A stretch of 64,000 nt of DNA, taken from contig CATNEN010000003.1 of assembly GCA_950097015.1 (NCBI GenBank), forward strand, positions 13,516,001 through 13,580,000, given 5' to 3'. Positions 11,845 to 23,690 of this stretch are shown piece by piece. The stretch's first letter is position 1, and the number at the start of each line of letters is the position of its first letter. Origin of the DNA: Macrostomum hystrix. Lineage: Eukaryota; Animalia; Platyhelminthes. Made by a program: the position numbers and the translations under genes. Under the pieces are notes generated by a model. That model worked only from the letters and a program-made list of their open reading frames with translations, was not told where the DNA came from and searched no databases.

Positions 11845-12360
11845 TACTTTCTGCTGTTTTATGAAATTTAGCCCCTTCTCTCTTTCTATTGATTTTTATC
11901 GGCGACTTTAAACTTAACATCTTCATTACTGCCCATCGCACCAAATAAATTTTACTTACTGTCTGCCCTGACGAAGAATGATATATAGTTATTCTAAAAT
12001 ACTTCAAATTTTCCTGCGATTTAAGGTGCTCTCCTCTCTCCTTCCCCTCCTCTCTGAAGTTAGGATCAAAGAAATTGTAATAAAGCATTTTTGAAGTGCT
12101 TTTCATAATCTTTCAAGCTACAATGCTTTCTTTTTTAGAGAAACAAAAGCCAAGAGTTTGAGAAAAATCTATGGAGCAATCTCTAAATTAAGAAAATTAA
12201 AAGTGGAATATTTACGCAATTGTTTAACTACTTTACGGAAACTAAATTTCAGAGTAAAAAACGCAAACTACTCTACTAAAATATTGGTCAGTAGCATACT
12301 AAAAATATGTGAAATATTTTGTGATAATTTCATATAGTTGATTCCGTGGATTTTTTGCCA

Positions 12361-12528
12361 CTAATTTCCAACACTAATTGAGGCATTGGCTTGCAAGCCC
12401 TGCTGCTGCTGCTGCTGCTTTCGTTGATTGTGCTGCATCTTTGGCTGTAGAGGAGGAAGAAATTCGCGATGAGCGCTAAGAATGCAACCGGCAGTGTGAG
12501 ACGGCTTCCCGCAAGCCAAGCAGAGGCC
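12361..12528 (-). CDS. RING/TRAF-ZnF gene terminal exon
   Basis: Acceptor actccag, phase 0. GLCLACGKPSHTAGCILSAH completes the Cys/His motif, followed by polyQ and TAG. Full model is about 329 aa including the micro-exons. Confidence 0.75.
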   Translation of the reverse strand, partial: GLCLACGKPSHTAGCILSAHREFLPPLQPKMQHNQRKQQQQQQGLQANASISVGN

Positions 12529-12620
12529 CTGGAGTTCGTTGCTTTTTGTTTTAGACATTGTCAAATCGGTAATCGATGTTAAAAAGCGTTTAATGACTCT
12601 AAATGAGAAGTTGTACTCAC

Positions 12621-12629
12621 CCCGAACGT
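12621..12629 (-). CDS. Putative 9-nt micro-exon (ACGTTCGGG, Thr-Phe-Gly)
   Basis: Minus strand reads tcaattttag|ACGTTCGGG|gtgagta, phase 0. Confidence 0.65.
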
Positions 12630-12739
12630 CTAAAATTGATGACGGGACGTGGCACAGAACGAGTTTAAAATGAAATGTAAAGTAGATTAACAAATTAGCA
12701 TTGTTCAAAAGTAGGTGGCGAGTCCGTTGCACAACTTAC

Positions 12740-12745
12740 TTGAAT
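12740..12745 (-). CDS. Putative 6-nt micro-exon (ATTCAA, Ile-Gln)
   Basis: Minus strand reads ttgattttcag|ATTCAA|gtaagtt, phase 0. Confidence 0.62.
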
Positions 12746-13063
12746 CTGAAAATCAATTTTAACAATTTTCTGTCAGCTTCCATCTTTTTAAGGCTTGTAA
12801 AATTTAAATAAGAAAAAACTAACTTACAATCTGTGAAGCAAGTTGTTACAATCGTTCGTTTGCTCATTAGAAACCAGTTGTATAGAGGTCCAGGATTACA
12901 TGAAAATTCAAAAGTATAATTTAGTACGTTTTGAAGGCAATTATAATAACTAATATTCATTTCATGCTAAAAGTACACTCGCTGAGTAAGTTCCAATCAA
13001 ACAATAGGCTTACTACGAAGTTTGTTGTGGGATTTTCATTCTACGATGGTCCTGTTGACTTAC

Positions 13064-13066
13064 CGG
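13064..13066 (-). CDS. Putative 3-nt micro-exon (CCG, Pro) of the RING/TRAF-ZnF gene
   Basis: Minus strand reads ccaattttcag|CCG|gtaagtc: strong acceptor and perfect donor 3 nt apart, phase 0. Confidence 0.6.
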
Positions 13067-13562
13067 CTGAAAATTGGTAGAGTTTGGGATGAAATTTTAG
13101 CACTGAGCATCTGAAGGCTTTGTTTGCTATGGGAAACTAGGGCCTAAGAAAGCCTATTTGTAGTACGTTGCACAGTGTGCTCATATTGCTTCAACGAGCA
13201 TCAGCTAAAGCTAGAAATTTCGTCGTCCATTCCATGGAATAAACAACTGCAGCTGTACATCTGATCCAACGTAAATTTTTTTATCTATAATTCCATTGTG
13301 CTATTGAATTTTCCTCTTATCATCGTATGGGAAATCAGTTTTCTCTTACACAAATGTAACAATATAATTTTCAAGGCCGAATTCTAGCAGTCACGCGTAG
13401 ATTGCGTGATAAATTTCTCTCGCTTATTTTTAGTACAGAATATTCCACTTAATATGGCAGTTCTCAAGGTCAAATTTTAAGTAGTCACGCGTTGTTTGCG
13501 TGACAATTTTCATGCATTTTTAGCATGGTAAATTTCAATTCTATTCCTAAGAAAGCACTTAC

Positions 13563-13770
13563 CCCGCCGTGCCATCGACAAGCGGTCTCGTGATTCGACT
13601 CGTTGCTATACACTTTGCGACATCTTTCGCATCGTTTCACATCCTCGGCCGAGGGCACTGGCGGCAAAGCTTGACGCCGAGCAAAGCCTGGCACACCCAT
13701 GCGCTCGAGGTGGATTAGCTCGGTGCGACGAAATTCTTGCATTGTTACTAGGCTGTGCTCGCGAAGTAGC
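13563..13770 (-). CDS. RING/TRAF-ZnF gene exon 3
   Basis: Acceptor cgacag, donor GGG|gtaagt. Ends in CERCRKVYSNESNHETACRWHGG, the first half of a Cys/His zinc-binding motif. Confidence 0.8.
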
Positions 13771-13825: not shown

Positions 13826-14069
13826 CAGAGGGGTATTTCAAATCCCCACATTTTTTTCAGTGTCTTCCAAAAATGCAATCAATCGCCGTGATAATCCAGA
13901 ACACAGACTTCATTTTCCGCTCTATCCGATGAAACAACTTCCAGAATCACAAATCATCGGAATTTTTACGAAAATCTGTCATTTAGTTTGGGAGGAATCG
14001 TGAAGTAGGTATTTGAAATACCCCAAGTTTTTCCCCCCTGGGGTAATAGCGTCGTGTCTCGCTCTACTG
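13826..14069 (+). mobile_element. Non-autonomous element, Helentron/HINE-like, short copy
   Basis: Shares blocks with 43431-43876. Subterminal inverted repeats ggggtatttcaaat / atttgaaatacccc and a 3' hairpin ttcccc...ggggtaa. Confidence 0.55.
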
Positions 14070-14352: not shown

Positions 14353-14499
14353 CTGTAGTGATCCAGCACGTCTTTGTTGCACTGCTTCATGCATTGCTTG
14401 CGGGCCAATTTCATTTCCAATTCGTGGCATCGAGTTTTCACCTGATGCGCCAGCAGCTCCTTCTGCAGCATCTGCTTCTTGCAGACTCGGCAGTGTATT
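14353..14499 (-). CDS. RING/TRAF-ZnF gene exon 2
   Basis: Acceptor ttgcag, donor AG|gttag, phase 2 at both ends. Encodes IHCRVCKKQMLQKELLAHQVKTRC...DHYR. Confidence 0.8.
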
Positions 14500-14663
14500 C
14501 TGCAATGAACGGAAAAGCTAACCAAAATTATTATACGAATAAAAATTTGCAAAGAGTGCCGTGGAGTAGTAATACTATGTTGTAGGAGGGCTTTCGGCAA
14601 TCGAATGTTAATTGGTTAAATTTTACATCAACCCCATTGCCACAAAGTGAAATTTTAGGCAAT

Positions 14664-14978
14664 GGCACATCATTTGGTGACACTAGACTTTCAGCCAGCG
14701 AGGAGGCAATTCTACCCATTTCGTTGACTCCTGAGCACCCACGCACACAGATACAGTACGCAGGCACACGCTCACACCTCATCGTCATCGTCAGGCAGTG
14801 CACACTTTGACTGTACTGTGCCTAGGAGGTTGGTCCTCAAGGGCGTGAATTGCACGACAAGCCCCCAAGCCTTCTCTCCGCTGCTGCCCCCTAAGTTGGT
14901 GTGATGTTGCCATGGAATCGAGCTCAGGGACCTCGATGCGAGAGGCAAACGCGTTAAGCGCTCAGCCACTCAACTCCA
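14664..14978 (-). mobile_element. tRNA-derived SINE copy in RING gene intron 1
   Basis: Same family with a small internal deletion. Confidence 0.82.
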
Positions 14979-14995
14979 TCCAGAGTGCTTCGGAC

Positions 14996-15092
14996 ACTGA
15001 CACATCTTATGGTGACAGTCGACCCGCAGCCAACGAGGAGGCAATTCCGCCCATTCCACTGGCTTTACATCTGTACATCTGCTCTGACTTTA
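14996..15092 (-). mobile_element. Degenerate 3' fragment of the same SINE
   Basis: gacccgcagccaacgaggaggcaattccgcccatt and tgtacatctgctctgacttt match the SINE body. Confidence 0.7.
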
Positions 15093-15122: not shown

Positions 15123-15571
15123 CGTTTGAAGCCGCACTCAGAGTCATGCCTGTCGGCCAGCTCTCGACGGTGCACGCTGCTGCAGCCCTGGTTGGCGCAC
15201 GCCACCTCCGCCTTGCCGCAGTCGTTCGAATAGTGCCGTTCAAGCTCGGCTAGTCGCAGGCCCGTCAGTCCGCAGCGTTTCGGGCAGGACAAACGCAGAC
15301 TAGACAGTTCAACTCGGATCCAGTTCGGCACGCCTCTGCCGTTATCATCGTCGACTGCGTCGTCCTGCAGGACAATGCGATCGTCGCACACCCGACAGCG
15401 GAACAGTCGCTGACGACCAGTAGTTCGTTGGCGCAGGCAGGACTGGCAGACCAGGTGTTTGCCAGAGCAGGGCAGACACACCGGATTGTCCAGCACGCAC
15501 TGACAGGCTGTGCATTTCACATCTGGTTTCAAGGCATCCGGATTGAAAAACAGAGTCACCTTGTAGCCCAT
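15123..15571 (-). CDS. RING + TRAF-type zinc-finger E3 ubiquitin ligase (RNF151/NRDP1/PDZRN-like N-terminus), exon 1
   Basis: MGYKVTLF...CTACQCVLDNPVCLPCSGKHLVCQSC...CRVC RING, followed by TRAF-like fingers (CPKRC...LERHYSNDC, CANQGC...H..EC). Donor CG|gtgcga at 15122 joins exon 2 to give ECGFKRIHCRVC. Confidence 0.85.
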
Positions 15572-16235
15572 TCTAGCTCAGTCTGAGCCGCCTCTCTTCA
15601 GCCGTCGTCTCCAAGGCTAATATTTTTCAATCCGTTCATTTTAAATTGGCCCCAACCTCAAGATGGGTATTGGACGAATGAGAGTAAGAGAGGACAGTGA
15701 TAGGGCAGAGACTTAAATAGTTGGGTCTGCAGATGGGGTTGCCAATTTATTTCAAGCGAAGTCTATTCTATGCCATCCAACTATTGACGAAATTAATAAA
15801 GGCTGCAAACTGGCTATACTGCTCTTCTGTTGTTAATAAGATAGAGAGAAATGCCACCTCACACACTCACACACTCACACACACTCCTAGACACCTGGAG
15901 GTGGGTGAAAAAAGATGCAGAGATGACAGGCCAATACAATGCTCACTGTGATATGATGCAAAACACACAAACTGCTTTGATGAAGACTAAGAGAGATAAT
16001 AGTTTGAGATAGTCAACTTCAATCTATTATAGACAGCTACAATATTGATGGTAATAAAGAGCTGAATGTTGAAGTCTACGATTCTTTTTGGCTGATAAAT
16101 TTATAAATATTAATAAATATAGTCAGCTATAATATAGTGAATGGTAGGTAAAAAAATTAGGCGCAAAAAATGTTTTTGAAGTGAAAAATAAATATTTCCT
16201 AACTAACCTTACCAAAATGAGTTAAATTTAAGAAC

Positions 16236-16905: not shown

Positions 16906-17949
16906 GTATCTTCTTATGCCACTATATATTTTATAAATTTTATTTAATTAAGTGCAAAAAGTTTTATTTCTGAATGTTAGTCAATAGACACTACTTATTG
17001 TTTAGTACGATATTTAGCATTTTTTAAATATTTTCACTAAACTATTTAATATATGATATTAAAATTCAACTGTTAGTCTTTCTTAATTTATCGCAGTCTA
17101 AGAAGCATAATTACAGACAGAATATCTTTTTAGAGCCACGTCTCGTAAATCAGTTCCGAACCAATTAAAAAAACCTAATCACCTGTCGGAATTAGTAATC
17201 ATTTTATTGCATATTTAATTAATCTACAAGTATTTGGCAGTGTGCAAGTGGCAAAAAGAGAAGAGCAATTTCCTGTGGGAATAAAAAAATTACGAGTACT
17301 TTCAATTCCTTCTTCGTCTATCGTAGTCTTCATTTCCTATTTTTTGAGTTCGTCAAAATGTATTCTCATCGTTCGTGGCTTTTTTTCTAGTTTCGTTTTC
17401 TCGCAAACATTTAATTCCCGTTCCCAGATGGCCTGCGGGCGGTCAGGAAATGCGAAAATCTCATTAGATGGGAAGCGGAGAGATGACACTAAATAGGCGT
17501 AGAGGGAAGCGATGCGGTGACACTGCTCAGGCTTTTAGTTTCTCCTATTCTGTGAGCTATTTATAGTTAACTTAGTTATTATTATGAGGATATGAGGACA
17601 TGAGGATATTGTATTAGAAATCACTGATTGGGATCACAAACAGCAGAAGAGACAAAATCATAGAGGAAAGAAGATAGTAGATTTAAAAAACATTCGACAC
17701 ATTTTATTTTATAAGGAAAGACACATGACGACTGTACTGTGACGTTAATGAGAAAGATTAGAAAATTTGTGTGGTTTCTGTAACTGAAAAAGTGAAGTTA
17801 TGTGCGATGAATAGTTATAATCCTGAAAATGATAGTAGTATTCCTGACAAAGATGATAAGAATAGGTATAAAGATAATGAGAATCCTGACAAAGATAATA
17901 ACCCCGATAAGGACTATGAGAATCAGGAGTAGGATAAAGTGAAATGTGA

Positions 17950-19826
17950 TGTGAGTAGGATCATGAGGATTGTGAGAAGAATCATGAGAATTGTGAAAAA
18001 TGATCATGAGAATTCTGAGAAGGAGCATGAGAATTGTGAGAAGGATCATGAGAATTGTGAGAAGGATCATGAGAATTGTGAGAAGGATCATGAGAATTGG
18101 GAGAAGGAGCATGAGAATTGTGAGAAGGATCATGAGGATTGGGAGAAGGATCAAGAGAACTGTGAGAAGGATCATGAGAATTGGGAGAAGGATCATGAGA
18201 ATTGGGAGAAGGATCATGAGAATTGGGAGAAGGATCAAGAGAACTGTGAGAAGGATCATGAGAATTGGGAGAAGGATCATGAGGATTGTGAGAAGGATCA
18301 TGAGAATTGTGACAAGGATCATGAGAATTGTGAGAAGGATCATGAGAATTGGGAGAAGGATCATGAGGATTGTGAGAAGGATCATGAGAATTGTGAGAAG
18401 GATCATGAGGATTGTGAGAAGGATCTTGAGAATTGTGAGAAGGATCATGAGAATTGTGAGTAGGATCATGAGAATTGTGAGAAGGATCATGAGGATTGTG
18501 AGAAGGATCATGAGAATTGGGAGAAGGATCATGAGAATTGTGAGTAGGATCATGAGAATTGTGAGAAGGGTCATGAGGTTTGTGAGAAGGATCATGAGAA
18601 TTGTGAGAAGGATCATGAGAATTGTGAGAAGGATCATGAGGTTTGTGAGAAGGATCATGAGAATTGTGACAAGGATCATGAGAATTGTGAGAAGGATCAT
18701 GAGAATTGGGAGAAGGATCATGAGAATTGGGAGAAGGATCAAGAGAACTGTGAGAAGGATCATGAGAATTGGGAGAAGGATCATGAGGATTGTAAGAAGG
18801 ATCATGAGAATTGTGACAAGGATCATGAGAATTGTGAGAAGGATCATGAGAATTGTGAGAAGGATCATGAGGTTTGTGAGAAGGATCATGAGAATTGTGA
18901 GAAGGATCATGAGAATTGTGAGAAGGATCATGAGAATTGTGAGAAGGATCATGAGAATTGTGACAAGGATCATGAGAATTGTGAGAAGGATCATGAGAAT
19001 TGTGAGAAGGATCATGAGAATTGTGAGAAGGATCATGAGGATTGTGAGAAGGATCATGAGAATTGTGAGAAGGATCATGAGAATTGTGAGAAGGATCATG
19101 AGAATTGTGAGAAGGATCATGAGAATTGTGAGAAGGATCATGAGGATTGTGAGAAGGATCATGAGAATTGTGAGTAGGATCATGAGAATTGGGAGAAGGA
19201 TCATGAGAATTGTGAGAAGGATCATGAGAATTGTGAGAAGGATCATGAGAATTGTGAGAAGGATCATGAGAATTGTGAGAAGGATCATGAGAATTGTGAG
19301 AAGGATCATGAGAATTGTGAGAAGGATCATGAGAATTGTGAGAAGGATCATGAGAATTGTGAGAAGGATCATGAGAATTGTGAGAAGGATCATGAGAATT
19401 GTGAGAAGGATCATGAGAATTGTGAGAAGGATCATGAGAATTGTGAGAAGGATCATGAGAATTGTGACAAGGATCATGAGAATTGTGAGAAGGATCATGA
19501 GAATTGTGAGAAGGATCATGAGAATTGTGAGAAGGATCATGAGAATTGTGAGAAGGATCATGAGAATTGTGAGAAGGATCATGAGAATTGTGAGAAGGAT
19601 CATGAGAATTGTGAGTAGGATCATGAGAATTGTGAGAAGGATCATGAGAATTGTGAGAAGGATCATGAGAATTGTGAGAAGGATCATGAGAATTGTGAGA
19701 AGGATCATGAGAATTGTGAGAAGGATCATGAGGACTGTGAGAAGGATTATGAGGATTGTGAGAAGGATCATGAGAATTGTGAGAAGGATCATGAGAATTG
19801 TGAGAAGGATCATGAGAATTGTGAAA
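17950..19826. repeat. 21-bp minisatellite (gagaaggatcatgagaattgt)
   Basis: About 89 copies. Confidence 0.94.
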
Positions 19827-20454
19827 ATGCTCACTAAAATTGAGAGAATAATCATGAAAATCCCAAGAAAACTCTTGAGAATTTTGAGAATATAATGAGA
19901 ACCTGCTGGATAAAGACAATGAGAACCTAAAAACAATACAGAGCAAACACACGAAAATAATCTTAAAACCAATCAATGAGAATAGACTCAAAATGTAAAT
20001 AGAAAGAATTAATAAGTAGAGATGTTGCTGAAGTAATAATTCAGTCTTAAATAAAGTAGTCCATTGTATGGCGTAAATTGGGCACTGAGCATCGCCATTG
20101 AGGTAGCAAAAGAATATGGCTTTGAGAGTCATTTTCCCGAGTCAGAGATAATTTAGACATTTAGCTGTCTTCTTTAGCTCTAATGGAAGGCTTTGCGGGA
20201 AAAAAACACAGTCTCTAGGATGGCAAAGGCATGACAGGAAGAAAATTACACAGGGGAATTTACATCCGGCTAAAACTACTGACTTTTTCTGCTTCTAAAA
20301 ATATTATTATTACATCTTTCCAGGCAGCAACGCTGAGAGAGTTAAAAATTTTTTTTGAGGCCGGCTTAAAAAGAGCACAACAAATGTATCTCGAGAAGAT
20401 TAAAAAGACACAAAAAACCGAGTCGAATTTCCACTTCAAGGAGGGAGAAAGGAT

Positions 20455-21820
20455 GAGAGTAGACTGAGATATTAGGCTGTGAGAGAGTGGGCTGTGAGAG
20501 TAGACTGAGAGTAGACGGTGAGAGTAGACTCTGAGAGTAGACTGAGATATTAGGCTGTGAGAGAGTGGGCTGTGAGAGTAGACTGAGAGTAGACGGTGAG
20601 AGTAGACTGTGAGAGAGTGGGCTGTGAGAGTAGACTGAGAGTAGACGGTGAGAGTAGACTGTGAGAGAGTAGACAGGCTGTGAGAGAGTAGACTCTGAGA
20701 GAAGACTTTGAGAGAGTAGACTGTGAGAGTAGACTGTGTGAGAGTAGACTGTGTGAGAGTAAACTGTGAGAGTAGACTGAGATATTAGGCTATGAGAGTA
20801 GACTGTGAGAGTAGACTGTGAGAGTAGACTGAGATATAAGGCTATGAGAGTAGACTGTGAGAGTAGACTGAGATATTAGGCTATGAGAGTAGACTGTGAG
20901 AGTAGACTGTGAGAGTAGACTGTGAGAGTAGACTGTGAGAGTAGACTTTGTGAGAGTAGACTTTGAGAGAGTAGACTGTGAGAGTAGACTGTGTGAGAGT
21001 AAACTGTGAGAGTAGACTGTGAGAGTAGACTGAGATATTAGGCTATGAGAGTAGACTGTGAGAGTAGACTGTGAGAGTAGACTGTGAGAGTAGACTGTGA
21101 GAGTAGACTTTGTGAGAGTAGACTTTGAGAGAGTAGACTGTGAGAGTAGACTGTGTGAGAGTAAACTGTGAGAGTAGACTGTGAGAGTAGACTGAGATAT
21201 TAGGCTATGAGAGTAGACTGTGAGAGTAGACTGTGAGAGTAGACTGTGAGAGTAGACTGTGAGAGAGTAGACTCTGAGAGTAGACTTTGTGAGAGTAGAC
21301 TGTGAGAGTAGACTGTGAGAGTAGACTGTGAGAGAGTAGACTCTGAGAGTAGACTTTGTGAGAGTAGACTGTGAGAGTAGACTGTGAGAGTAGACTGAGA
21401 TATTAGGCTGTGAGAGTAGACTGTGAGAGTAGACTGTGAGAGTAGACTGTGAGAGTAGACTGTGAGAGTAGGCTGTGAGAGAGTAGACTGTGAGAGTAGA
21501 CTGTGAGATAGTAGACTGTGAGATAGTAGACTGTGAGAGTAGACTGTGAGACAGTAGACTGTGAGACAGTAGACTGTGAGACAGTAGACTGTGAGACAGT
21601 AGACTGTGAGACAGTAGACTGTGAGACAGTAGACTGTGAGACAGTAGACTGTGAGACATTAGACTGTGAGATAGTATAGACTGTGAGACAGTAGACTGTG
21701 AGATAGTATAGACTGTTAGAGAGTGGACTGTGAGTCAGTAGACTGTGAGATAGTAGACTGTGAGAGAGTAGACTGTGAGAGAGTAGACTGTTAGAGAGTG
21801 GACTGTGAGTCAGTAGACAT
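20455..21820. repeat. 13/15-bp minisatellite (gagagtagactgt)
   Basis: Direct inspection. Confidence 0.9.
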
Positions 21821-23099
21821 TGAGATATAAGATGACGATTGTAAACAAAAGTGTTATTTGTAAAAATCATGAACACAAACACTCAGTTTGATTACCTATA
21901 TATTTAAATCATAGGTGGAACTTATGAAATAAATTTGTTGCAGAGTTCAATATTCTAATTAGTTCTGTGTCAGAGTAGGCAAGCAGGCGTTAACCAGTTA
22001 GTATTTTTAAGTAACATTTTTAATGGGTATTATACTTTATAGTTTTATAAAAGTCTAATTTAGATTCATAAAATTAAAACGATTCATTCTCTTTCATTAA
22101 ATTTCAGCGGCAAAACAATTTTGTTGATGCACAGAAGTCACGCAGAAAAGTGATTCTTTGTGTGATACAACAGCAAAAAATTAGCTATTCGATTGCAAAA
22201 TAATTACGAGCTATTAATTCCGAAATCCCGACCTAATTATCTAGTCTTAAAAAAACTATAGTTGCATATAATGAAGCGAAAATATCGATATATCGATTAT
22301 GCGATCGATAAATCGATTAAGCGATCGATAAACCGATTAACTAATCGATAAATCGATAAAAAATCAATACAGCGATAAATTGACAATAATGTGTGTATTG
22401 ATTTAACAAACGATAAAACAAAGAACTAATAAGTAAACTGATAATGTGATAAAACTAAACCGATTGCTTACTGAAATTTTGCTTACATATGCTTATAAAA
22501 TGTGACTGAATGCACAACATCGACTTGATTAGGAAACATAATTTTGAGATTCGACAAAAACTAAATTATAAAAATATATTGAATCAAATTTTACGAGAAA
22601 TAAAAAGATGAACTAATTCATTAATGCTTCTACATGTTTTAGATGTAATCAGAAATCAAAACAGAGAAAAAACAAGTCATTAAAATTTAGTATTTGCTTT
22701 TTTTCAATGCTTTGCATCAGTTAGTAAGTATTAAAGCTCAAGATATTGAATACAAAATCGATAAATCTCAGAACCGATCGATAACTTCAGAAACAAATCG
22801 ATAAGTTTAAAAAACCGATCGATAAGTTCAGACAGCAATAGACAAGTTTAGAAGCCAATCCATAAGTTCATTGGTTAGTACGAGAAAACTATTAACTAAT
22901 CGATAAAGTCAGAAAATAGATCGATAAATATCGATTCCGATCAATAACTTGAAAAAACGATCGATAATACAAAAACGCTATCAAAAATTTAATAAATTTC
23001 TCTACAAATACATAAACACAAAAAACCTACAGTATTAAGCTGATTGCTATGTCCAGATAACGAATCGTCAAATCAATAAACCGATCGATAATAATCTAG

Positions 23100-23690
23100 T
23101 CAACCCCTCAGATCCGGCACAGCCTCCAGGCTGCCAAAGATGCTGGCCAACTGCTGCTGATAGGTGTCAATGGAACGACGCATAATGTCCAGGCAGGGAC
23201 CCAGTAGGCGTTCAAACGAGCCGACTTCAAGCACGGCCACCTTGCAACGATTGCCGCAGGCGTACACGCTGGCAGCTCGCGGCTGTTTGGTTAGGAGGGC
23301 CAACTCGCCGAAGTAGCCGCCCTTGCCAAGGCGCAAGATTTCCACCTCCTCGCCGCTGTCGCCGCGTCGGCGAGTGATGCGCACCTCGCCATCCTCGACA
23401 AAGAACATTTCGTTGCCCGGGTCGCCCTGGGCTATGATTTTCTCGCCGTCGACGCACGACTTTGACTTCAGGGCGTCGGCAACACTCATCCGCTCGTAGG
23501 GGGACAGCTGTTTCAGCAGCGGCACCGACTCCAGGAGGTTCTCGTACATCACCCGCTTCTGGAAGGCCTTCTTCAGTACTAGGCGACGGAATGTCTCCCG
23601 TTCCATGGCCCACAGACTGCCGGGTTCGGAGCACACAATTGTGGCTGCGCGAGGGGCATTGTACATCAGAGCCAGCTCACCGAAGGAGCC
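23100..23690 (-). CDS. PRKAR2: PKA regulatory subunit exon 2 (cNMP-A and cNMP-B)
   Basis: Acceptor gtccag. Phosphate-binding cassettes FGELALMYNAPRAAT and FGELALLTKQPRAAS. Stop at 23100; total about 396 aa. Confidence 0.95.
   Translation of the reverse strand, partial: GSFGELALMYNAPRAATIVCSEPGSLWAMERETFRRLVLKKAFQKRVMYENLLESVPLLKQLSPYERMSVADALKSKSCVDGEKIIAQGDPGNEMFFVEDGEVRITRRRGDSGEEVEILRLGKGGYFGELALLTKQPRAASVYACGNRCKVAVLEVGSFERLLGPCLDIMRRSIDTYQQQLASIFGSLEAVPDLRG

What the first reader, a model, noticed from the sequence alone, without database searches (positions are those of the whole stretch)
12529..13562. Three consecutive micro-exons (3, 6 and 9 nt) build the loop of a zinc-binding motif in a RING/TRAF E3 ligase
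Seen in sequence: between exon 3 (...ACRWHGG) and the last exon (GLCLACG...), the minus strand has three acceptor-donor pairs: ttttcag|CCG|gtaagt (13066-13064), ttttcag|ATTCAA|gtaagt (12745-12740) and ttttag|ACGTTCGGG|gtgagt (12629-12621). All are phase 0, multiples of three and stop-free, with introns of 496, 318, 110 and 92 nt. Joined, they give CERC...N...CRWHGG-P-IQ-TFG-GLCLACG...GC...H, a CHORD-like C/H pattern in which H-x-G-P is the expected continuation. Three such perfect pairs within 450 bp are unlikely by chance. Established: symmetric micro-exon series are known from schistosome MEG secreted proteins and from neural micro-exon programmes. Inference: here a single-codon exon and two more sit in an intracellular E3 ligase, and skipping could set loop length anywhere from 0 to 6 residues. 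Standard gene predictors would miss them.
Basis: partly seen in the sequence, partly recalled or inferred. Interest (0 to 1): 0.85.

Follow-up and report, generated by a model that had tools for sequence, protein, structure and literature searches.

The report
Four tiny exons encode zinc-domain loop
A flatworm RING/TRAF-type gene really does splice in a run of four exons only 3, 3, 6 and 9 bases long; together they supply seven conserved residues in the middle of a CHORD-like zinc-binding domain, and public gene models in flatworms and corals get this spot wrong.

Summary

- **RNA evidence.** Spliced transcript contigs from four public runs place 21 nt (CCG, ATT, ATTCAA, ACGTTCGGG) between exon 3 (ends 13563) and the last exon (starts 12528). 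These encode P-I-IQ-TFG. No contig joins the two large exons directly.
- **Chance.** Four such acceptor/donor pairs in a 1,034-nt interval are far beyond chance (expected 0.025).
- **Conservation.** The seven residues fill exactly the seven columns that transcript-derived homologues from corals and an unidentified (probably cnidarian) lineage fill with P[VI][VA]DVFG, and an RNA-aware acoel model with PFLDLFE. Pro and Phe are invariant.
- **Domain.** It is a shortened, remote CHORD relative (best solved match RAR1 CHORD-II, E 1e-4). It fails the Pfam CHORD model.
- **Annotation.** Models in Macrostomum lignano, Acropora, Pocillopora and Montipora skip or misread this spot. An uncharacterised coral-type contig carries the same ttacag|CCG|gtaagt 3-nt exon.
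- **Not supported.** I found no support for loop-length tuning by exon skipping.

Earlier notes from this scan describe other micro-exon cases in this genome, but not this one.

Verdict: a real, extreme new member of the class of conserved constitutive micro-exons.

The parts
15123..15571 (-). Exon 1, coding part (Met at 15571; transcript contigs run on to at least 15650). Encodes the RING-like finger and the TRAF-type zinc finger. Donor AACG|gtgcga.
   Evidence: Contig pieces 15123-15650 and the joint 14499/15123 in all four runs. Pfam zf-TRAF 28.6 bits against a cut-off of 27. TRAF6 in PDB, E 0.005.
14353..14499 (-). Exon 2 (147 nt). Acceptor ttgcag|A, donor ACAG|gttaga.
   Evidence: Joints 14499/15123 and 13769/14352 (cut +1) in all four runs. 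Translation.
13563..13770 (-). Exon 3 (208 nt). Its end encodes the first half of the CHORD-like module (C-x2-C ... N ... C-x-W-H-G-G). Donor GGG|gtaagt, phase 0.
   Evidence: It aligns to the first half of the homologues' module and ends at the W-H-x-G column.
13067..13562 (-). Intron A (496 nt). Contains 2-3 copies of a ~32-nt unit with a 7-bp hairpin.
   Evidence: Joint 13066/13563 in contigs of X1 and X2. Repeats.
13064..13066 (-). Micro-exon 1: CCG (Pro), 3 nt, ttttcag|CCG|gtaagt.
   Evidence: First 3 letters of the 21-nt insert in the X4 contig. Joint 13563->13066 in X1/X2. M. lignano models read ...WHGG-P-VSQ. The Pro is invariant in homologues.
12831..13063 (-). Intron B (233 nt). Retained in some transcripts; read-through gives a stop after 17 codons.
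   Evidence: 292-nt contigs in X1/X2 and a 111-nt contig in X3 cover 12828-13066 or part of it. Translation. The same read-through appears in M. lignano models P0060-62.
12828..12830 (-). Micro-exon 2: ATT (Ile), 3 nt, cacag|ATT|gtaagt.
   Evidence: The insert reads CCG-ATT-ATTCAA-..., and no contiguous ATTATTCAA exists in the interval. Retained-intron contigs stop matching the genome exactly at 12828 and carry 26 further letters.
12746..12827 (-). Intron C (82 nt).
   Evidence: Follows from the insert and the flanking sites.
12740..12745 (-). Micro-exon 3: ATTCAA (Ile-Gln), 6 nt, ttttcag|ATTCAA|gtaagt.
   Evidence: Insert in the X4 contig. Sites.
12630..12739 (-). Intron D (110 nt).
12621..12629 (-). 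Micro-exon 4: ACGTTCGGG (Thr-Phe-Gly), 9 nt, ttttag|...|gtgagt.
   Evidence: Insert in the X4 contig. The Phe aligns with the invariant Phe of homologues.
12529..12620 (-). Intron E (92 nt).
   Evidence: Introns at the same position are implied in Nematostella and acoel models.
12236..12528 (-). Last exon. Encodes the second half of the module (G-L-C-x2-C-G ... G-C-x4-H). Stop TAG at 12363-12361. The 3' UTR runs to about 12215-12270.
   Evidence: Contig pieces 12215/12236/12252/12271-12529. ORF. Alignment.

Best explanation
The single-copy minus-strand gene at about 15650-12236 encodes a roughly 330-residue protein. It has a RING finger, a TRAF-type zinc finger, a helical linker and a short C-terminal CHORD-like module (6 Cys + 2 His, so presumably two zinc ions).

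The seven residues at the centre of that module are PIIQTFG. They lie between the His of C-x-W-H and the first Cys of C-x2-C-G. They are encoded by four consecutive phase-0 micro-exons of 3, 3, 6 and 9 nt, separated by introns of 496, 233, 82, 110 and 92 nt.

Shown: the exons are included in the mature mRNA, apparently constitutively.

Inferred:
- Exons this short cannot be bound at both ends at once, so they are probably joined one after another. Each is first fused to a neighbour, which then presents the next splice site.
- Near-perfect splice signals help this: three GTAAGT donors and one GTGAGT; TTTTCAG/TTTTAG at three of the four acceptors and CACAG at the ATT exon. These are stronger than those of the gene's ordinary exons.
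- The transcript that retains only intron B is then a slow last step or a by-product.
- The residues are needed for the domain's fold, not for tuning it.
- The arrangement derives from an old 21-27-nt coding segment bounded by phase-0 introns, present in cnidarians too, that has been cut up further.
For: RNA evidence:
- A 1,198-nt contig of run X4 runs through 15650-15123, 14499-14352 and 13769-13563, then 20 extra letters, then 12529-12252.
- Those 20 letters plus the G at 12529 are, on the gene strand, CCG ATT ATTCAA ACGTTCGGG.
- In X1-X3 the contigs break exactly where this form and an intron-B-retaining form diverge (after ...GGGCCG) and rejoin (at G-ATT...).
- Those contigs show the joint 13563->13066 and stop matching the genome at 12828.
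- All matched exon pieces have 0 mismatches.

Not a retrocopy: the genome holds only one copy of exon 1, of exon 3 and of the region.

Not chance.

Splice sites: micro-exon donors are gtaagt x3 and gtgagt, against gtgcga and gttaga for exons 1-2.

Colinearity: aligned by reference, exon 3 and the last exon leave exactly 7 empty columns against intact homologues. Those columns hold PVVDVFG/PIADVFG in transcript-derived homologues and PFLDLFE in an acoel model, with P, D and F invariant among those eight sequences.

Domain: RAR1 CHORD-II (2xcm) is the best solved match, over the whole module.

Age of the arrangement:
- More than 25 cnidarian models read W-H-x-G and then V-S..., which is a gtaagt read-through. 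That implies a phase-0 intron at the same spot.
- Nematostella reads PIVDVFG-VSQ and acoel models break after ...LFE.
- Coral-type contig L006 has ttacag|CCG|gtaagt 1,230 nt downstream of the W-H-K-G exon, with chance about 0.0015.
Against: - All RNA evidence comes from one study (four runs whose type is not on record) and from assembled contigs, not raw reads. Contigs drop rare isoforms and cannot give inclusion levels or tissue patterns, so minor skipped forms cannot be excluded.
- The 26 loose letters beyond 12828 were not displayed, so their content is inferred from their length.
- Ordered splicing is inference from exon size and from one intermediate-like contig.
- Zinc binding, E3 activity and the structural role of the loop are untested. 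The AlphaFold model of the coral homologue has pLDDT below 50 over the module.
- The Pfam CHORD model does not match.
- The coral CCG exon rests on one contig from an unidentified organism, without junction reads. The contig ends before the next exon.
Confidence: 0.9

Rival explanations
1. The micro-exons are regulated cassettes. Including or skipping them individually tunes the spacer between the two halves of the zinc module.
For: - All four are phase 0 and multiples of three, so any subset keeps the frame.
- In the coral Montipora, rare transcript-derived proteins lack VVDV (P0078, 1 contig) or the Met after the loop (P0077, 2 contigs). The full form occurs on 7-11 contigs.
Against: - No contig in four runs of this species skips any micro-exon.
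- Loop length is identical among the eight intact sequences aligned and in the flatworm, with Pro and Phe invariant. That fits a structural requirement.
- The only variant seen here is an intron retention that truncates the protein.
Confidence: 0.1
2. Retention of intron B is a deliberate switch. It yields an mRNA with a premature stop, which either gives a protein lacking the second half of the zinc module or is degraded, and so lowers the gene's output.
For: - Intron-B-retaining contigs with every other intron removed occur in 3 of 4 runs.
- The same read-through (…WHGG-P-VSQ…) underlies three deposited M. lignano proteins, so it is abundant enough to be assembled in two species.
- The read-through peptides share R-M-K at the same offset.
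Against: - It may simply be the slowest intron of an ordered pathway.
- Contig word depth is lower than that of the exon contigs, and the form is absent in X4 (depth is only a rough guide).
- There is no evidence of translation or regulation.
Confidence: 0.15
3. The sites are chance look-alikes, or the insert is an assembly artefact, and real mRNAs join exon 3 directly to the last exon as in the M. lignano models P0001/P0064.
For: The direct join is in frame, and two public M. lignano models use it.
Against: - The 21 inserted letters equal the four predicted exons in genomic order.
- Independent contigs in other runs break at the predicted branch points.
- Chance expectation is 0.025 sites.
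- The direct join would delete 7 columns that every intact homologue fills.
- The M. lignano direct-join proteins carry only UniRef accessions and their basis was not checked. Three NCBI M. lignano models contain the Pro exon.
Confidence: 0.02

Closest known systems
Conserved constitutive coding micro-exons of plants (Yu et al. 2022, PMC8831610; Zygnema genomes, PMC11096116)
   Same: - Exons of 1-15 nt lying inside conserved protein motifs.
- Mostly included in the transcript.
- Routinely missed or misannotated.
- Sometimes adjacent (5 + 12 nt), and one Arabidopsis transcript has 5.
- Explained there by gradual intronization of a once-continuous coding segment.
   Different: - This case is in an animal.
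- It is a run of four exons, all <=9 nt, including two 3-nt exons back to back.
- All are phase 0.
- The flanking intron positions appear to be shared between cnidarians and a flatworm.
Human RPS24 micro-exons (3, 18 and 22 bp between exons 4 and 6; PMC12207440, PMC11162997)
   Same: Consecutive micro-exons that include a 3-bp exon, and that are hard to detect with standard mapping.
   Different: The RPS24 exons are alternative and alter the extreme C-terminus and 3' end. Here the exons look constitutive and lie in the core of a folded zinc module.
Schistosome micro-exon genes (MEGs; bioRxiv 10.1101/2023.06.21.545858: exons of 3-81 bp, symmetric, long introns)
   Same: Both are in flatworms and have runs of symmetric (multiple-of-three) micro-exons down to 3 bp.
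   Different: MEGs are secreted, fast-evolving proteins built almost entirely from micro-exons and diversified by skipping. Here only 21 of about 990 coding nt are micro-exonic. The protein is an intracellular-type RING/TRAF protein with no evident signal peptide, and the segment is conserved across phyla.
Neural alternative micro-exon programme of bilaterians (SRRM3/4-dependent; from my own knowledge, Irimia et al. 2014, Torres-Mendez et al. 2019)
   Same: 3-27-nt, frame-preserving exons with strong splice sites.
   Different: Those exons are tissue-regulated cassettes that usually lie on protein surfaces. No regulation is seen here, and an upstream UGC motif lies near only one of the four acceptors. 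Tissue data are lacking.
CHORD domain (RAR1, CHORDC1/morgana; PDB 2xcm, 2yrt)
   Same: The order and most spacings of C-x2-C, F/Y-x4-N-x4-C-x2-H-x-G-P and G/P-C-x4-H match. RAR1 CHORD-II is the best solved match.
   Different: - About 10 residues shorter.
- The CHORD 'F-H-D' His and the 'W-x-C-C' pair are replaced by D-V-F-G-G-M-C-x2-C.
- It occurs as a single copy at the C-terminus of a RING/TRAF protein, not as tandem CHORDs with a CS domain.
- It fails the Pfam model.
Recursive / sequential splicing of very short exons (from my own knowledge: Sterner and Berget 1993 on a vertebrate mini-exon; Drosophila ratchet points)
   Same: An acceptor is followed almost at once by a consensus GTAAGT donor. 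The exon is too short for simultaneous recognition of both sites, so stepwise joining is expected.
   Different: In classical recursive splicing the ratchet point leaves nothing in the mRNA. Here 3-9 nt are kept at each step. The order of steps is not shown.

Membership tests
Internal coding micro-exon (<=15 nt) | Internal exon of <=15 nt flanked by canonical AG and GT | tested here: met
   All four exons are flanked by AG and GT[AG]AGT.
Internal coding micro-exon (<=15 nt) | Present in spliced RNA | tested here: met
   The 21-nt insert in the X4 contig; joint 13563->13066 in X1/X2; contig match ends at 12828.
Internal coding micro-exon (<=15 nt) | Keeps the reading frame and encodes conserved residues | tested here: met
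   Phase 0 and multiples of 3. The exons fill exactly 7 alignment columns, with Pro and Phe invariant.
Schistosome-type micro-exon gene (MEG) | Most of the coding sequence made of symmetric micro-exons | tested here: not met
   Only 21 of about 990 coding nt. The other exons are 449, 147, 208 and 165 nt.
Schistosome-type micro-exon gene (MEG) | Secreted product (signal peptide), lineage-specific and fast evolving | tested here: not met
   The N-terminus leads straight into a RING finger. Homologues exist in cnidarians and acoels. The signal peptide was judged by eye only.
Regulated (neural-type) alternative micro-exon | Variable, tissue-dependent inclusion | not testable with these tools
   Only contigs of four runs without tissue labels were available. 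No skipped form was seen.
CHORD domain (Pfam PF04968) | Matches the family model above threshold | tested here: not met
   No CHORD hit at E<=10 for intact homologues or for the window's exons.
CHORD domain (Pfam PF04968) | Similarity to solved CHORD domains over the whole module | tested here: inconclusive
   RAR1 CHORD-II at E 0.0043 (single sequence) and 1.1e-4 (3-sequence profile). CHORDC1 at E 0.038, first half only.
CHORD domain (Pfam PF04968) | Six Cys and two to three His in CHORD order, binding two zinc ions | tested here: inconclusive
   6 Cys + 2 His are colinear with CHORD, but C-C is replaced by C-x2-C and the third His is absent. Zinc binding was not tested.
TRAF-family RING E3 ligase | N-terminal RING followed by TRAF-type zinc finger(s) | tested here: met
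   zf-TRAF 28.6 bits against a cut-off of 27; RING models only weak. TRAF6 E 0.005. The family profile hits TRAF5/6 RING-ZF at 1e-15.
TRAF-family RING E3 ligase | C-terminal TRAF-C/MATH domain | tested here: not met
   No MATH hit in any exon or in full-length homologues. The C-terminus is the CHORD-like module.
TRAF-family RING E3 ligase | Ubiquitin-ligase activity | not testable with these tools
   Needs biochemistry.

The most novel reading that the evidence does not exclude
The 3-nt CCG (Pro) exon and the phase-0 introns that bound the loop are inherited from the cnidarian-bilaterian ancestor. That would make this one of the smallest exons conserved over more than 600 million years. Under this reading the whole run (3-3-6-9 nt in the flatworm; 3 nt plus further pieces covering 27 nt in corals) is an ancient micro-exon nest kept at the heart of a zinc domain, spliced by an obligatory stepwise pathway, and mis-modelled in several deposited flatworm and coral annotations.
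Probability: 0.4. Interest if true: 0.75.

Novelty: new member of a known kind. Interest (0 to 1): 0.6.

Why it matters
- **Limits of exon size.** This is a clean, RNA-supported case near the lower limit of exon size: two 3-nt exons back to back within a run of four, inside an ordered and conserved domain rather than a disordered or secreted peptide. It offers a compact natural substrate (about 1 kb) for asking how spliceosomes handle exons too short to be bound at both ends.
- **Annotation.** This family's C-terminal domain is truncated or deleted in public protein sets from several phyla. Word-based searches with the intact domain therefore find almost nothing, which is probably why the domain has no family model.
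- **Evolution.** If the intron positions are truly shared by corals and flatworms, the locus becomes a marker for very old intron/micro-exon architecture.

Tried and rejected
- **The look-up of encoding contigs was closed.** I could not fetch the genomic loci of M. lignano, Montipora, Acropora, Pocillopora, Nematostella or the acoel.
- **The joined 330-residue protein was deliberately not built or searched.** Exons were used one by one by reference, and natural full-length homologues served as proxies.
- **Pfam.** No family for exon 2, exon 3 or the C-terminal module, not even in intact homologues.
- **Region-limited homologue search.** A search with the intact coral module found only its own cluster, because most cluster representatives are the truncated models. 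A profile search added a single new protein, which also breaks right after the loop.
- **AlphaFold2 on the coral homologue (8-row alignment).** The RING/TRAF part was confident, but pLDDT was below 50 over the module. No fold search was run on it.
- **Rfam on the whole window.** No match.
- **Own-genome searches.** No paralogue or retrocopy.
- **Coral-type contigs L005 and L007.** They end about 600 nt into the first intron, before the place where L006 has the CCG exon. L003, L004 and L010 have too little downstream sequence.
- **Non-canonical joints** (for example 12419/14440, within or beside CAG-rich stretches). Treated as spurious.
- **M. lignano model P0003.** It is frameshifted and fused to the neighbouring gene. 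It contains D-S-N where ATTCAA-AC would fall in another frame. This is suggestive of the 6-nt and 9-nt exons but too unreliable to count.
Full report
**What is in the sequence.**
On the minus strand, exon 3 ends ...CAC GGC GGG|gtaagt at 13563. The last exon begins ctccag|GGC CTC TGC at 12528. They are far beyond chance:
- TTT(Y)AG followed within 12 nt by GTRAGT occurs nowhere else on either strand of the 64-kb window.
- The looser pattern YAG + 3, 6 or 9 nt + GTRAGT has seven hits in 128 kb, and four of them are in the sense strand of this 1,034-nt interval.
- Markov simulations of the interval give a mean of 0.025 hits, with P(>=3) = 5e-5.

**RNA evidence.**
One public study holds this gene in four runs. 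Their library type is not on record, but their contigs are spliced at canonical introns and match the exons without a mismatch, so they derive from RNA. The genome has no second copy or retrocopy of exon 1, exon 3 or the region.

A 1,198-nt contig of run X4 covers exon 1 (15650-15123), exon 2 (14499-14352) and exon 3 (13769-13563). It then carries 20 letters that lie on neither side, and continues with 12529-12252. Read on the gene strand and completed by the G at 12529, those letters are CCG ATT ATTCAA ACGTTCGGG. No contiguous ATTATTCAA exists in the interval, so ATT must be its own exon.

In runs X1-X3 the assembly breaks exactly where two forms diverge (after ...GGG CCG) and rejoin (at G ATT ...). 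The second form is a 292-nt contig (X1, X2; a partial one in X3). It joins 13563 to 13066, runs unspliced through 13063-12831, stops matching the genome at 12828 and carries 26 more letters. That is the length of ATTCAA + ACGTTCGGG + 11 nt of the last exon. In this form every intron is removed except the 233-nt intron B.

No contig joins exon 3 directly to the last exon, and none skips any micro-exon. The gene structure is therefore 449 + 147 + 208 + 3 + 3 + 6 + 9 + 165 coding nt. The introns around the micro-exons are 496, 233, 82, 110 and 92 nt long.

**What the seven residues are.**
I did not build or search the joined protein. Exons were handled one by one by reference, with natural homologues as proxies.
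- *N-terminal part.* Exon 1 has a TRAF-type zinc finger (Pfam 28.6 bits, cut-off 27) after a RING-like finger. A profile of the family hits the RING-ZF part of TRAF5/TRAF6 at 1e-15. There is no MATH domain.
- *Homologues.* A whole-library search with exon 1 found Macrostomum lignano proteins at 69% identity, so the window is from a related macrostomid flatworm. At lower scores it found proteins of corals, sea anemones and acoels with the same C-terminal motif.
- *Intact loop in other phyla.* Transcript-derived coral proteins, three intronless (apparently transcript-derived) contigs from metagenome collections, and the RNA-aware NCBI model of the acoel Symsagittifera roscoffensis all carry an intact module. 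Its pattern is C-x2-C-x3-F-x4-N-x4-C-x-W-H-x-G, then P-[VI]-[VA]-D-V-F-G (acoel: P-F-L-D-L-F-E), then G-M-C-x2-C-G-x6-G-C-x4-H.
- *Fit to the window.* Aligned by reference, the window's exon 3 ends at the W-H-x-G column and its last exon starts at the G-[ML]-C column. That leaves exactly seven empty columns, which the 21-nt insert fills with PIIQTFG. Pro and Phe are invariant in all intact sequences.

**Is it a CHORD domain?**
The best solved match of the intact module is RAR1 CHORD-II (2xcm), aligned end to end, at E 0.0043 with one sequence and 1.1e-4 with a three-sequence profile. CHORDC1 (2yrt) follows at 0.038. The Cys/His order is colinear with CHORD. However, the module is about ten residues shorter, has C-x2-C in place of C-C, and lacks the F-H-D histidine. 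The Pfam CHORD model does not match. I therefore call it a remote, shortened CHORD relative, not a member. The micro-exon residues correspond to the P-x-V-F-H-D-x-L-R-G stretch of CHORD, between the fourth and fifth putative zinc ligands. An AlphaFold2 model of the coral homologue was unreliable there (pLDDT below 50), so the geometry is not known.

**Annotation failures.**
- *M. lignano.* Models P0001 and P0064 join W-H-G-G directly to G-L-C-L-A-C-G, losing 7 residues. The NCBI models PAA91724.1, PAA63352.1 and PAA91737.1 read W-H-G-G-P-V-S-Q..., which is the CCG exon followed by gtaagtca... of retained intron B. This is the same form as in the window's runs.
- *Corals.* Acropora cervicornis and Pocillopora meandrina models join W-H-K-G directly to C-Q-A-C-G, losing 9 residues. 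Two Montipora RefSeq models misread the spot or stop there.
- *Other cnidarians.* More than 25 further models continue W-H-x-G-V-S..., a read-through of a gtaagt donor.

**How old is the arrangement?**
- *Intron after W-H-x-G.* Those read-throughs place a phase-0 intron right after W-H-x-G in many anthozoans, as in the flatworm.
- *Intron after the loop.* Nematostella isoform X2 reads P-I-V-D-V-F-G-V-S-Q. Acoel genome models break after ...L-F-E (V-S-G in one). This places a second phase-0 intron at the end of the seven residues, again as in the flatworm. The acoel has no intron before the Pro.
- *The CCG exon in a coral-type contig.* In L006, from a JGI metagenome, ttacag|CCG|gtaagt lies 1,230 nt downstream of the W-H-K-G exon, behind a good pyrimidine tract. 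It is the only such site in the contig, and its chance is about 0.0015. The contig ends before the next exon, and the sister contigs L005 and L007 end earlier.
- *Codon use.* The Pro codon is CCG in the window, in L006 and in three independent transcripts.
- *Rare isoforms.* Rare Montipora isoforms lack V-V-D-V or the following Met. This fits several further small exons in corals.

Together this suggests, but does not prove, that an old 21-27-nt coding segment between phase-0 introns, possibly already split after the Pro, was cut up further in the flatworm lineage. It parallels the 'gradual intronization' proposed for adjacent plant micro-exons (PMC11096116).

**Mechanism.**
Shown: the four exons are included. 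The donors of the micro-exons are GTAAGT (three) and GTGAGT, and three of the four acceptors are TTTTCAG/TTTTAG. The ordinary exons of the same gene use gtgcga and gttaga donors and ttgcag, cgacag and ctccag acceptors. One abundant variant retains intron B alone.

Inferred, from established knowledge that exons below roughly 50 nt cannot be recognised at both ends at once: the exons are joined stepwise, each first fused to a neighbour, with intron B removed last or least efficiently.

The retained form would stop after 17 codons. Whether it is an intermediate, noise or a regulatory off-switch is open.

**Comparison and novelty.**
These features are already known elsewhere:
- 3-nt exons.
- Runs of micro-exons: schistosome MEGs with exons of 3-81 bp (10.1101/2023.06.21.545858), human RPS24 with 3, 18 and 22 bp (PMC12207440), and plant adjacent micro-exons, including one Arabidopsis transcript with five (PMC8831610).
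- Their systematic misannotation.

This is therefore a new member of a known kind. It stands out by its compactness (3-3-6-9 nt within about 540 bp), by lying in the core of a conserved zinc module of an intracellular-type protein, and by the probable deep conservation of its boundaries. Earlier notes of this scan describe other micro-exon cases in the same genome (a LAR phosphatase and a peptide precursor) and name the genus. They did not cover this locus.

**Limits.**
- The RNA evidence is contigs from one study.
- There is no quantification and no tissue information.
- There is no structural or biochemical test.

Noticed in passing
L006:3871-3873 (JGI contig Ga0126337_10016218): A coral-type homologue has ttacag|CCG|gtaagt 1,230 nt after its W-H-K-G exon. 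This is the same 3-nt Pro exon as in the window. Chance is about 0.0015. In this contig the first ~290 codons of the gene form a single exon, so this contig shows no intron before the CHORD-like loop.
   Followed up: partly
Proteins P0001, P0060-P0064, P0082, P0121, P0065, P0066, P0097 (public models): Deposited models of this family in M. lignano, Acropora, Pocillopora, Montipora and Nematostella delete, truncate or misread the loop. Cluster representatives in the protein collection are mostly the truncated forms, which hides the C-terminal domain from word-based searches.
   Followed up: yes
Proteins P0077, P0078 (Montipora transcript contigs): Rare isoforms lack the Met after the loop (3 nt) or V-V-D-V (12 nt). 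This hints at further micro-exons or alternative donors in corals.
   Followed up: no
window 13386-13417 and 13480-13511 (also weaker 13505-13536): Intron A carries two to three copies of a ~32-nt unit, spaced ~94 nt apart. Each contains a 7-bp hairpin (GTCACGC ... GCGTGAC). Function unknown; possibly a small repeat element or a structure that brings splice sites together.
   Followed up: no
window 14599-15074 and 13885-14003: Stretches inside introns 1 and 2 have contig word depths of hundreds to thousands, with many 90-95% matches and loose ends. These are dispersed, expressed repeats (the first has a tRNA-like ...GGTCCCTGAGCTCGATTCC... segment, suggesting a SINE).
   Followed up: no
window +22718, +52137, -11965: These are the only other YAG + 3/6/9 nt + GTRAGT sites in the window (CAG TTA GTAAGT; CAG TGGACC GTAAGT; CAG ACA GTAAGT). 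The last lies about 250 nt beyond the 3' end of this gene's transcript contigs. They were not checked for use.
   Followed up: no
window 23100-23666 (minus strand): A long open exon encodes cyclic-nucleotide-binding domains of a protein kinase A regulatory-subunit-like protein. The M. lignano model P0003 wrongly fuses that neighbour to the RING/TRAF gene, so the two genes also appear to be neighbours in M. lignano.
   Followed up: no
window 17800-21900: Long coding-looking minisatellite arrays (units of about 24 and 15-21 nt) lie between the two genes and give very strong GC skew. They are open in several frames only because of the repeat.
   Followed up: no
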